A program made the translations under genes and the position numbers. 64,000 nucleotides of DNA from positions 6,448,001-6,512,000 of the forward strand of contig NW_027361709.1 in NCBI RefSeq assembly GCF_039654945.1. The letters run 5' to 3'. The DNA is from Dendrobates tinctorius. Lineage: Eukaryota. The notes under the pieces are model-generated. The model worked only from the letters and a program-made list of their open reading frames with translations, was not told the DNA's origin and did not search any database. Positions 43,929 to 44,464 of the stretch are shown here, one piece after another (position 1 is the stretch's first letter; every line of letters starts with the position of its first letter).

Positions 43929-44309
43929 TCACTTCTTGGAGCTCTGCGTCTTCTTGGGCAGCAGCACGGCCTGGATGTTGGGCAGCACGCCCCCCTGGGC
44001 GATGGTCACCCCTCCCAGCAGCTTGTTGAGCTCCTCGTCGTTGCGGATCGCCAGCTGCAGGTGCCGCGGGATGATGCGCGTCTTCTTGTTGTCCCGCGCC
44101 GCGTTCCCCGCCAGCTCCAGGATCTCCGCGGACAGGTACTCCAGCACGGCGGCCAGGTACACGGGGGCGCCGGCCCCGACCCGCTCCGCGTAATTCCCCT
44201 TCCGGAGCAGCCGGTGGACGCGGCCTACTGGGAACTGCAGCCCGGCCCTGGAGGAGCGGGACTTGGCCTTGGCCCGGGCTTTTCCGCCGGATTTCCCTCG
44301 TCCTGACAT
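43929..44309 (-). CDS. Solitary histone H2A variant, 126 aa, short C-tail (KKTQSSKK)
   Basis: [126 protein letters not shown]. The ATG is in accATG context. There is no SQEY (H2A.X) or SQKTK (H2A.J) end. Confidence 0.95.
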
Positions 44310-44464
44310 GGTCAACACCTGCAGCCGGGGACAGAAGACGCGTTAGCGCCGGTTCCCGGGAGCAGCGCCGGGCGCGGGGGCCGGGTATGACGTACCGTGG
44401 TAGGTAGCGCGTTACACGGGATCACCTGCGGGAGCTCTGCCCTCCGCCACAGCCAGCGCCGCAC

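What the first reader, a model, noticed from the sequence alone, without database searches (positions are those of the whole stretch)
43929..44430. Unnamed short-tailed H2A with a candidate 5'UTR intron
Seen on the minus strand: donor CG|GTACGT (44395), branch-point-like CTAAC, a pyrimidine tract and CTGCAG| acceptor (44319) define a 77-nt intron ending 9 nt before the ATG. An alternative donor CAG|GTGATC lies near 44425. The protein has GKSGG instead of GKQGG, EYLSAE instead of EYLTAE, and ends KKTQSSKK. It keeps the K118/K119/T120 sites but lacks H2A.X or H2A.J SQ motifs. Known: canonical H2A genes are intronless, clustered and end in a stem-loop. Inference: a distinct replication-independent H2A lineage.
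Basis: partly seen in the sequence, partly recalled or inferred. Interest (0 to 1): 0.7.

Follow-up and report, generated by a model that had tools for sequence, protein, structure and literature searches.

The report
Ancient solitary spliced H2A histone gene
This frog gene encodes a histone H2A whose 126-residue protein is letter-for-letter identical in frogs, turtles, lizards, alligator and birds. It always lies between HMCES and H1-10, has no histone stem-loop, and is missing at that site in two placental mammals, so it looks like an unnamed replication-independent H2A lineage.

Summary
An intact 126-aa H2A ORF lies on the minus strand (ATG 44309, stop 43931-43929).

The gene is not a canonical copy or a recent retrocopy:
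- The exact protein occurs in 335 blocks of the public collection. In all 14 sauropsid and frog places inspected (window included) it lies in the order COPG1 > HMCES > H2A > < H1-10.
- There are no amino-acid changes in 105 codons across nine species, while synonymous sites are near saturation.
- No histone stem-loop exists in the window or in ten related loci. A canonical control locus has them.
- A 5'UTR intron candidate sits at the same place in nine orthologues. A wall-lizard gene model is reproduced only by splicing exactly there.
- A conserved terminal exon with AATAAA lies 4.2 kb downstream. RNA-like runs hold it, but do not hold the 270 nt just after the stop.
- An anteater and a vampire bat have lost the coding sequence but keep its promoter octamer.

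I found no paper describing this lineage. Fish, salamanders, monotremes and marsupials were not tested.

The parts
44570..44577 (-). Octamer ATGCAAAT of the promoter. It is the most conserved promoter element.
   Evidence: ATGCAAA is invariant in all nine sequences of alignment A1: four frogs, a turtle, a lizard, two birds and an anteater. It is also present in the vampire bat at the syntenic site.
44516..44520 (-). Proximal CCAAT box (context AGCCAATCC).
   Evidence: GCCAAT is invariant in the eight non-mammalian sequences of A1. Sequence read.
44465..44482 (-). GC box GGGCGGGG (44482-44475) and CRE-like TGACGTCA (44472-44465), just upstream of or at the inferred transcription start.
   Evidence: Read. 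The block GTGGGCGG..GCTTG..GTCAGTGCGGCGCTGGCTGTGGCGGAGGGCAGA is nearly identical in the three hyloid frogs.
44396..44465 (-). Exon 1 (5'UTR only). The 3' end is fixed by the donor. The 5' end (about 44465, at the conserved CAGTGCGG) is inferred.
   Evidence: The segment is conserved in Engystomops and Leptodactylus and contains no ATG. The start site was not measured.
44319..44395 (-). Candidate 5'UTR intron, 77 nt: GTACGT...CTAAC...pyrimidine tract...CAG.
   Evidence: Homologous GT-AG candidates of 67-325 nt occur in eight orthologues. The lizard gene model P0027 is reproduced exactly only when L009 is spliced at the predicted sites. No reads were laid for this frog.
43929..44318 (-). Exon 2: 9 nt of 5'UTR plus the whole coding sequence (ATG 44309, stop 43931-43929). 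The exon may end at or shortly after the stop.
   Evidence: The protein is 100% identical to bird, alligator and lizard models. RNA-like runs hold 0.26-0.39 of the sampled words of 43660-44700, and exon 2 up to the stop alone would give about 0.36-0.38.
43927..43933 (-). Possible splice donor AA|GTGAGC overlapping the stop codon (GT = 43932-43931).
   Evidence: Sequence. The same AAGTGAGCG occurs in all eight bird loci. Kiwi, shearwater and flamingo gene models splice from it into downstream exons. The other three frogs, the turtle and the lizard have AAATGAG, which is not a donor. Its use in this frog is inferred only from word shares.
42432..43653 (.). Minisatellite, about 34-nt period, about 20-26 copies, inside the presumed 3' intron or 3' flank.
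   Evidence: Tandem Repeats Finder. Sequence read.
42069..42213 (-). Conserved non-coding block 1 downstream of the stop. It may be an exon or a regulatory element.
   Evidence: 67-69% identical to Engystomops and Leptodactylus at the corresponding place. Its role is unknown.
39722..39909 (-). Candidate terminal 3'UTR exon: acceptor TGTCTTGTTAG|GG, AATAAA at 39747-39742. The 3' end at about 39722 is inferred.
   Evidence: It holds the first AATAAA/ATTAAA in H2A sense after the stop. It is 79-89% identical to Engystomops and Leptodactylus, which have AATAAA at the same spot. RNA-like runs of the source species hold 0.80 of the words of 39690-39960. Amniotes have a comparable conserved terminal exon, which the kiwi model joins to the coding sequence.

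Best explanation
This is the frog copy of an old, single-copy H2A gene that has sat between HMCES and H1-10 at least since the last common ancestor of tetrapods.

It makes a nearly canonical nucleosomal H2A. The histone fold, acidic patch, docking domain, K118/K119 and T120 are intact. It has four fixed differences (S6, S59, Q121, and a tail ending SSKK that is 3-4 residues shorter). These have not changed in frogs, turtles, lizards, crocodilians or birds.

The gene is built unlike the replication-dependent cluster genes:
- an octamer/CCAAT promoter;
- a short non-coding first exon;
- a small 5'UTR intron;
- one coding exon;
- no 3' stem-loop;
- a distant conserved terminal exon with a poly(A) signal.

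The most likely mode of action is that of a replacement-type histone. A spliced, polyadenylated mRNA escapes the SLBP and stem-loop coupling to S phase, and so supplies H2A to chromatin outside DNA replication. This is analogous to H3.3 or mammalian H2A.J.

Shown here: the gene, its synteny, its absolute protein conservation, the absence of a stem-loop, the conserved splice and poly(A) signals, spliced gene models in a lizard and in birds, and transcription of both the coding part and the terminal block in RNA-like runs.

Inferred: splicing of the 77-nt intron in this frog, the exact 3' structure, independence from the cell cycle, and any special function of the tail.
For: - **Gene and family.** Intact ORF with H2A Pfam domains. 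It is about 95% identical to solved canonical H2A structures along its whole length.
- **Orthology.** 100% identity to models from seven bird species, Alligator and Podarcis, and 99% to a caecilian. The exact protein is in 335 blocks of the collection.
- **Synteny.** All ten places shown have HMCES upstream on the same strand. COPG1 appears in eight of them and H1-10, convergent, in eight. Three further frogs show the same arrangement, as does the window itself.
- **Selection.** dN = 0 over 105 codons in nine species. Frog-amniote identity at 4-fold sites is only 0.53-0.62, with GC3 of 0.88-0.98.
- **No stem-loop.** Rfam finds none in the window or in ten other loci, but finds two in a canonical Bombina cluster. 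A consensus scan finds none within 5 kb in nine orthologues, against a perfect stem-loop 36 nt after the control H2A.
- **5' intron.** Conserved GT-AG candidates in nine species. The lizard model P0027 is matched exactly only by the spliced translation.
- **3' end.** A conserved terminal exon with AATAAA in frogs and ATTAAA in amniotes.
- **RNA-like runs.** They hold a coding-sequence-sized share of 43660-44700 and 0.80 of the terminal block.
Against: - No reads were laid, so no splice junction, transcript end or expression level was seen directly in this frog.
- The runs used are only guessed to be RNA, and the word shares rest on 110 and 20 sampled words.
- The octamer/CCAAT promoter is the type that drives S-phase histone transcription, so transcription could still peak in S phase.
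- The protein is so close to canonical H2A that a separate biochemical role is unproven.
- Gene models with N- or C-terminal extensions are automatic predictions.
Confidence: 0.8

Rival explanations
1. The gene is real and conserved, but the 77-nt segment is not removed. Transcription would then start inside or downstream of it, or the 5'UTR would be continuous, and the GT-AG signals would be incidental.
For: No junction was observed in this frog. Exon 1 is too short to be resolved by 31-letter word shares. One stork model (P0029) reads straight through the equivalent bird segment.
Against: Donor, branch-like motif, pyrimidine tract and CAG acceptor are kept at the same place in nine species, while length (67-325 nt) and interior sequence drift. 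The Podarcis model requires the splice. The duck model P0026 fits the spliced reading and not the unspliced one.
Confidence: 0.1
2. An orphan replication-dependent H2A gene that moved out of a histone cluster, still processed at a stem-loop and expressed only in S phase.
For: The protein is near-canonical. The promoter is the octamer plus CCAAT type. RNA-like runs seem to lack the sequence just 3' of the stop, as a short histone-type 3' end would also predict.
Against: No stem-loop appears by Rfam at E<=10 in 41500-45000 or at gathering threshold in the window and ten loci. None appears within three mismatches of the consensus in 5 kb of nine orthologues, while the control has one 36 nt after its stop. 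There is no H2B partner upstream. The conserved terminal exon with AATAAA is transcribed.
Confidence: 0.04
3. A recent retrocopy or a gene-converted copy of a cluster H2A gene, or a decaying pseudogene.
For: The coding sequence is a single exon, and the first ten bases after the stop are shared with birds.
Against: The position and orientation are the same in frogs, turtle, lizard and birds. The protein is identical, with near-saturated synonymous sites. It differs from the frogs' own cluster H2A proteins at the same four positions everywhere. The promoter and intron signals are conserved.
Confidence: 0.01
4. In this frog and in birds the main product is not the 126-aa protein. The stop codon lies inside a splice donor (AA|GTGAGC). 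Splicing there would remove the stop and join the reading frame to a downstream exon. If it joined directly to the terminal exon here, two residues (VR) would be added. In kiwi, shearwater and flamingo models 38-42 residues are added.
For: The donor overlaps the stop in the window and in all eight bird loci. Models P0018, P0019 and P0020 use it. RNA-like runs of the source species hold a share of 43660-44700 that fits an exon ending at the stop (about 0.38 expected, 0.26-0.37 seen) and does not fit read-through (about 0.65 expected). The same runs hold 0.80 of the terminal block.
Against: Three other frogs, the turtle and the lizard have AAATGAG with no donor, so this cannot be the conserved mode. 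The added peptides are not conserved between birds. Word shares are coarse. Weaker GT sites exist 83-141 nt after the stop.
Confidence: 0.35

Closest known systems
Mammalian H2A.J (H2AJ)
   Same: It has a canonical-like H2A sequence that differs mainly in a few tail residues. It is a solitary gene outside the big clusters, makes polyadenylated mRNA without a stem-loop, and does not form a deep separate clade (PMC9526256, read). It is the best functional analogy for a replication-independent supply of near-canonical H2A.
   Different: H2AJ lies beside H4C16 near WBP11, SMCO3 and ART4 (PMC9526256), not between HMCES and H1-10. H2A.J has a C-terminal SQK motif and a Val in the N-terminal tail (my own knowledge). 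This protein has neither. H2A.J is reported only from mammals. This gene is in amphibians and sauropsids and is missing at its site in two placental mammals.
Replication-dependent cluster H2A (for example Xenopus or chicken H2A, human H2AC genes)
   Same: About 95% protein identity. The fold, acidic patch, docking domain, K118/K119 and T120 are the same.
   Different: It has no stem-loop, no H2B partner and no cluster. It has a 5'UTR intron candidate and a distant poly(A) exon. Its tail is invariant across tetrapods, whereas cluster H2A tails differ between species.
H2A.X
   Same: It shares the [11 protein letters not shown] stretch, a small hydroxyl residue at position 6 (T in H2A.X, S here), and a location outside the clusters.
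   Different: It has no C-terminal SQ(E/D)-hydrophobic motif and no extended tail.
H3.3 genes (H3-3A/H3-3B) as a gene-architecture paradigm
   Same: The protein is invariant over hundreds of millions of years, differs at only a handful of residues from the replication-dependent form, and is encoded by an intron-containing, polyadenylated, solitary gene.
   Different: It is a different histone. No dedicated chaperone or deposition pathway is known for this H2A.

Membership tests
Histone H2A (Pfam Histone + Histone_H2A_C) | Histone fold plus the H2A C-terminal docking segment, above Pfam thresholds | tested here: met
   PF00125 scores 56.5 bits (cut-off 26.4). PF16211 scores 74.6 bits (cut-off 20). 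Solved H2A chains match over residues 1-125.
Replication-dependent (canonical) H2A genes | 3' UTR stem-loop (Rfam RF00032) shortly after the stop | tested here: not met
   None in the window at gathering threshold, none at E<=10 in 41500-45000, and none in ten related loci. A consensus scan of 5 kb is negative in nine orthologues, while the control Bombina H2A has a perfect stem-loop 36 nt after its stop.
Replication-dependent (canonical) H2A genes | Location in a core-histone cluster, usually paired head-to-head with H2B | tested here: not met
   The neighbours are HMCES and H1-10 in the window and in 13 orthologous loci. There is no H2B-like sequence within 4.5 kb upstream in nine species.
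Replication-dependent (canonical) H2A genes | No introns | tested here: inconclusive
   Conserved GT-AG candidates in the 5'UTR of nine species, and a lizard model that needs the splice, argue against membership. No junction was seen in this frog.
H2A.X | C-terminal SQ(E/D) followed by a hydrophobic residue | tested here: not met
   The protein ends KKTQSSKK and contains no SQ.
H2A.J | C-terminal SQK motif and the H2AJ genomic position next to H4C16 | tested here: not met
   There is no SQ in the tail. The gene lies between HMCES and H1-10. The H2AJ position is taken from PMC9526256.
H2A.Z / macroH2A | Divergent core (about 60% identity to canonical H2A) or a macro domain | tested here: not met
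   The best matches are canonical H2A, H2A.J and H2A.X chains at about 95% identity. The protein is 126 aa and has no extra domain.
Short H2A variants (H2A.B, L, P, Q) | Truncated docking domain or C-terminus and an eroded acidic patch | tested here: not met
   The docking domain and the acidic-patch residues (E56, E61, E64, D90, E91, E92) are all present. Only the last 3-4 tail residues are missing.
Replication-independent (replacement-type) histone genes | Solitary gene with a poly(A) signal instead of a stem-loop, often with introns, and a conserved single-copy position | tested here: met
   Synteny. A conserved AATAAA/ATTAAA terminal exon. Intron evidence. RNA-like runs hold the coding part and the terminal block.
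Replication-independent (replacement-type) histone genes | Expression outside S phase with polyadenylated mRNA | not testable with these tools
No cell-cycle or poly(A) selection data were available.

The most novel reading that the evidence does not exclude
Non-mammalian tetrapods carry a so far unnamed, absolutely conserved replacement H2A. It would be the counterpart of what H2A.J does in mammals. On this reading:
- placental mammals lost its coding sequence but kept its promoter octamer, possibly as the start of the H1-10 antisense lncRNA;
- in birds and in this frog the stop codon doubles as a splice donor, so splicing decides between the 126-aa histone and a C-terminally altered form.
Probability: 0.25. 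Interest if true: 0.75.

Novelty: new member of a known kind. Interest (0 to 1): 0.62.

Why it matters
Xenopus and chicken are standard sources of histones and chromatin. An extra H2A gene that is invariant from frogs to birds and built like a replacement histone would belong in the vertebrate variant catalogue.

It would be a candidate supplier of H2A to non-dividing cells in these animals. Its absence from placental mammals, which instead have the mammal-only H2A.J, suggests a turnover of replacement H2A genes that can be tested.

The invariant tail (Q121, SSKK end) sits next to the K118/K119 ubiquitylation sites and the T120 phosphorylation site, and near where linker histone binds. It offers a small, defined set of residues to test. 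The neighbouring gene encodes linker histone H1.10.

Tried and rejected
1. **Laying reads.** No junctions, ends or depth are available. After that I sent no DNA of those places to any search tool, and I used only codons 1-105 for local comparisons.
   - The paper search contained short peptide strings taken from the finding's own text. The search found nothing and was not repeated.
2. **Nucleotide-level constraint on the coding sequence.** The 88-91% identity between frog and amniotes is explained by zero replacement changes plus GC3 of about 0.9. Identity at 4-fold sites is only 0.53-0.62.
3. **Fish orthologues.** Fish hits with odd lengths are H2A-H2B fusion models or internally mis-spliced canonical genes. 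No fish H1-10 appeared among the 120 listed hits. Fish remain untested.
4. **A coding remnant in mammals.** tblastn and a Smith-Waterman comparison against a codon-shuffled null found nothing in the anteater. tblastn found nothing in the bat.
5. **Origin from an H2A-H2B pair.** There is no H2B relic upstream. The Bombina control promoter shows no octamer for comparison.
6. **UTR similarity between frogs and amniotes.** blastn found none. Only a weak MAFFT resemblance exists at the terminal exon.
7. **Papers.** Searches for peptide strings, for H2A variants with HMCES or H1-10, and for sauropsid H2A variants found no description of this gene.
8. **Rhinatrema and Rana temporaria.** The 10-kb flanks around H1-10 did not reach an H2A gene.

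Full report
**Observation**

The minus strand carries an intact 126-codon H2A reading frame, with ATG at 44309 and stop TGA at 43931-43929. It matches both H2A Pfam domains. It aligns over its whole length at about 95% identity to solved canonical H2A, H2A.J and H2A.X chains.

- donor CCACG|GTACGT with the G at 44395;
- a CTAAC motif and a pyrimidine tract;
- acceptor CAG ending at 44319, giving 77 nt and ending 9 nt before the ATG;
- the second GT at 44425;
- GKSGG, EYLSAE and the ending KKTQSSKK.

**Surroundings**

In the orientation of the H2A gene, the order is:
- COPG1 exons (61.7-62.6 kb);
- HMCES/SRAP exons (48.4-50.4 kb);
- H2A;
- on the other strand, two H1.10 genes (35559-36158 and 17392-17961);
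- a RAB7A exon (about 3.3 kb).

**Orthology**

The word-based protein search returned models that contain exactly this 126-aa sequence. They come from seven bird species, Alligator and Podarcis. A caecilian model differs at one residue.

A look-up of the exact protein found it in 335 blocks of the public collection. In all ten places shown, HMCES lies upstream on the same strand. COPG1 is seen in eight of them, and a convergent H1.10 gene in eight.

I fetched Ascaphus, Engystomops and Leptodactylus. Each has a 126-aa H2A between H1.10 and HMCES in the same orientation.

Over codons 1-105 there is no amino-acid difference among nine species. Identity at four-fold sites between frogs and amniotes is 0.53-0.62, with GC3 of 0.88-0.98. 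That is close to what saturation would give. This rules out a recent retrocopy or a converted cluster copy, and it shows very strong purifying selection on every residue, including the tail. The tails of cluster H2A proteins differ between species.

**No stem-loop**

- Rfam finds no histone stem-loop in the window.
- It finds none at E<=10 in 41500-45000.
- It finds none in ten related loci.
- In a canonical Bombina cluster it finds two.
- It missed the one behind the Bombina H2A, so I also scanned for the consensus directly. The control has a perfect GGCTCTTTTCAGAGCC 36 nt after its stop. The window and eight orthologues have nothing within three mismatches in 5 kb.

**5' intron**

All nine species have a GT-AG candidate at the homologous place.
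- The four frogs have CG|GTACG donors and introns of 73-86 nt. The acceptor lies 9 nt before the ATG in the three hyloids and 17 nt before it in Ascaphus.
- The turtle, the lizard and the birds have CG|GT(A/G)AGG donors and introns of 67-325 nt.
- The interior drifts, while the ends and the pyrimidine tract stay.

The decisive indirect test uses a gene model. The N-terminal extension of the Podarcis muralis model P0027 is reproduced residue for residue when the P. raffonei locus is spliced at the predicted donor and acceptor. It is not reproduced by the unspliced sequence. The duck model fits the spliced pattern too. One stork model reads through.

**Promoter**

An octamer (ATGCAAAT, 44577-44570) followed by CCAAT boxes is conserved from frogs to birds. 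Hyloid frogs share an almost identical block around the inferred start site.

**3' end**

There is no AATAAA or ATTAAA in H2A sense for 4.18 kb after the stop. The first one (39747-39742) lies in the best-conserved non-coding block of the region. That block is 79-89% identical to Engystomops and Leptodactylus, which have AATAAA at the same spot. It is preceded by a conserved acceptor, TGTCTTGTTAG|GG.

Amniotes have a comparable, strongly conserved terminal exon ending in ATTAAA about 1.8 kb (birds) to 2.7 kb (lizard) after the stop. The kiwi model P0019 joins the coding sequence to it.

Public runs guessed to be RNA gave these word shares:

| Stretch | RNA-like runs, source species | Probable DNA runs |
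|---|---|---|
| 43660-44700 | 0.26-0.37 | 0.64-0.95 |
| 39690-39960 (terminal block) | 0.80 | 0.85-1.00 |

An exon 2 that ends at the stop predicts about 0.38 for 43660-44700. Read-through to 43660 predicts about 0.65.

So the transcript appears to leave the genome near the stop and to include the distant block. The only strong donor there is AA|GTGAGC, which overlaps the stop codon. It is shared with all eight bird loci, and three bird models use it. However, the other frogs, the turtle and the lizard have AAATGAG. I therefore treat use of this donor as a lineage-specific possibility, not a conserved feature. Joined directly to the terminal exon, it would add two residues in this frog.

**Mammals**

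In an anteater and a vampire bat, HMCES and H1.10 are neighbours with about 10 kb between them. There is no H2A coding remnant.

Both keep CCTATGCAAATCA(A/G)GG in H2A-sense orientation 1.3-1.5 kb from HMCES. The anteater also keeps the first CCAAT box. From memory, the human lncRNA H1-10-AS1 lies at this position and in this orientation. I did not test this, because human sequence was not to be used.

**Comparison with known variants**

The gene fails the defining tests for H2A.X, H2A.J, H2A.Z/macroH2A, the short H2As and the replication-dependent genes. It meets the structural criteria of a replacement-type histone gene (see the membership table). The closest functional analogue is H2A.J. The closest architectural analogue is H3.3.

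Seven paper searches found no description of this lineage. The 2022 histone nomenclature paper does not list it. Databases call it only 'histone H2A'.

**Limits**

After that I sent no DNA of those places to search tools.
- One paper search held short peptide strings overlapping their translation. It returned nothing.
- No contig taken for human was used.
- Fish, salamanders, snakes, monotremes and marsupials were not examined.
- Replication independence is inferred from gene structure, not measured.

**Verdict**

The gene is best filed as a new, unnamed member of the replication-independent H2A genes.

Noticed in passing
L011:19059-19122 (anteater, minus strand) and L021 around 19110 (vampire bat, minus strand): Placental mammals lack the H2A coding sequence between HMCES and H1-10 but keep its promoter octamer, CCTATGCAAATCA(A/G)GG, in the same orientation. 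The anteater also keeps the first CCAAT box. It may now serve another transcript, possibly the H1-10 antisense lncRNA (that link is from memory and was not tested).
   Followed up: partly
window 42432-43653: A 1.2-kb minisatellite (period about 34 nt, 20-26 copies, units containing GGGGTTAAC) fills the region between the H2A stop and conserved block 1. Neither downstream match to Engystomops or Leptodactylus falls inside it.
   Followed up: partly
window 42069-42213: A non-coding block conserved at 67-69% among three hyloid frogs, 1.7 kb after the H2A stop. It could be an extra exon or a regulatory element. Its role is unknown.
   Followed up: no
L002-L008, L010 at about +1720 to +1860 after the H2A stop; L009:13017-13106; L001:12681-12792: A terminal-exon-like block of about 130 nt with ATTAAA is conserved between birds, a lizard and a turtle. 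That is unusually strong conservation for a 3'UTR. Birds also share an AATAAA about 1 kb after the stop and an extra exon at about +660, which the shearwater and flamingo models use.
   Followed up: partly
window 17392-17961 and 35559-36158; L014, L016, L017, L019: Two H1.10 genes lie in tandem beside the H2A gene in this frog, and also in Engystomops and Rana temporaria. Leptodactylus has two H1.10 proteins on one contig. Ascaphus shows one copy within 10 kb.
   Followed up: no
window 4057-5097 and 58560-59600: Two nearly identical intact 346-aa Tc1/mariner-type transposase ORFs on the minus strand. A third, split copy lies at 24019-25094 on the plus strand.
   Followed up: no
window 26491-30666 and 9805-11606: Long tandem arrays give spurious ORFs of up to 1391 aa in several frames on both strands. 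They are repeats, not genes.
   Followed up: no
L020:4393-4445: At gathering threshold Rfam missed the perfect stem-loop behind the Bombina control H2A, although it found two others in the same locus. A negative Rfam result for RF00032 should therefore be backed by a direct consensus scan.
   Followed up: yes
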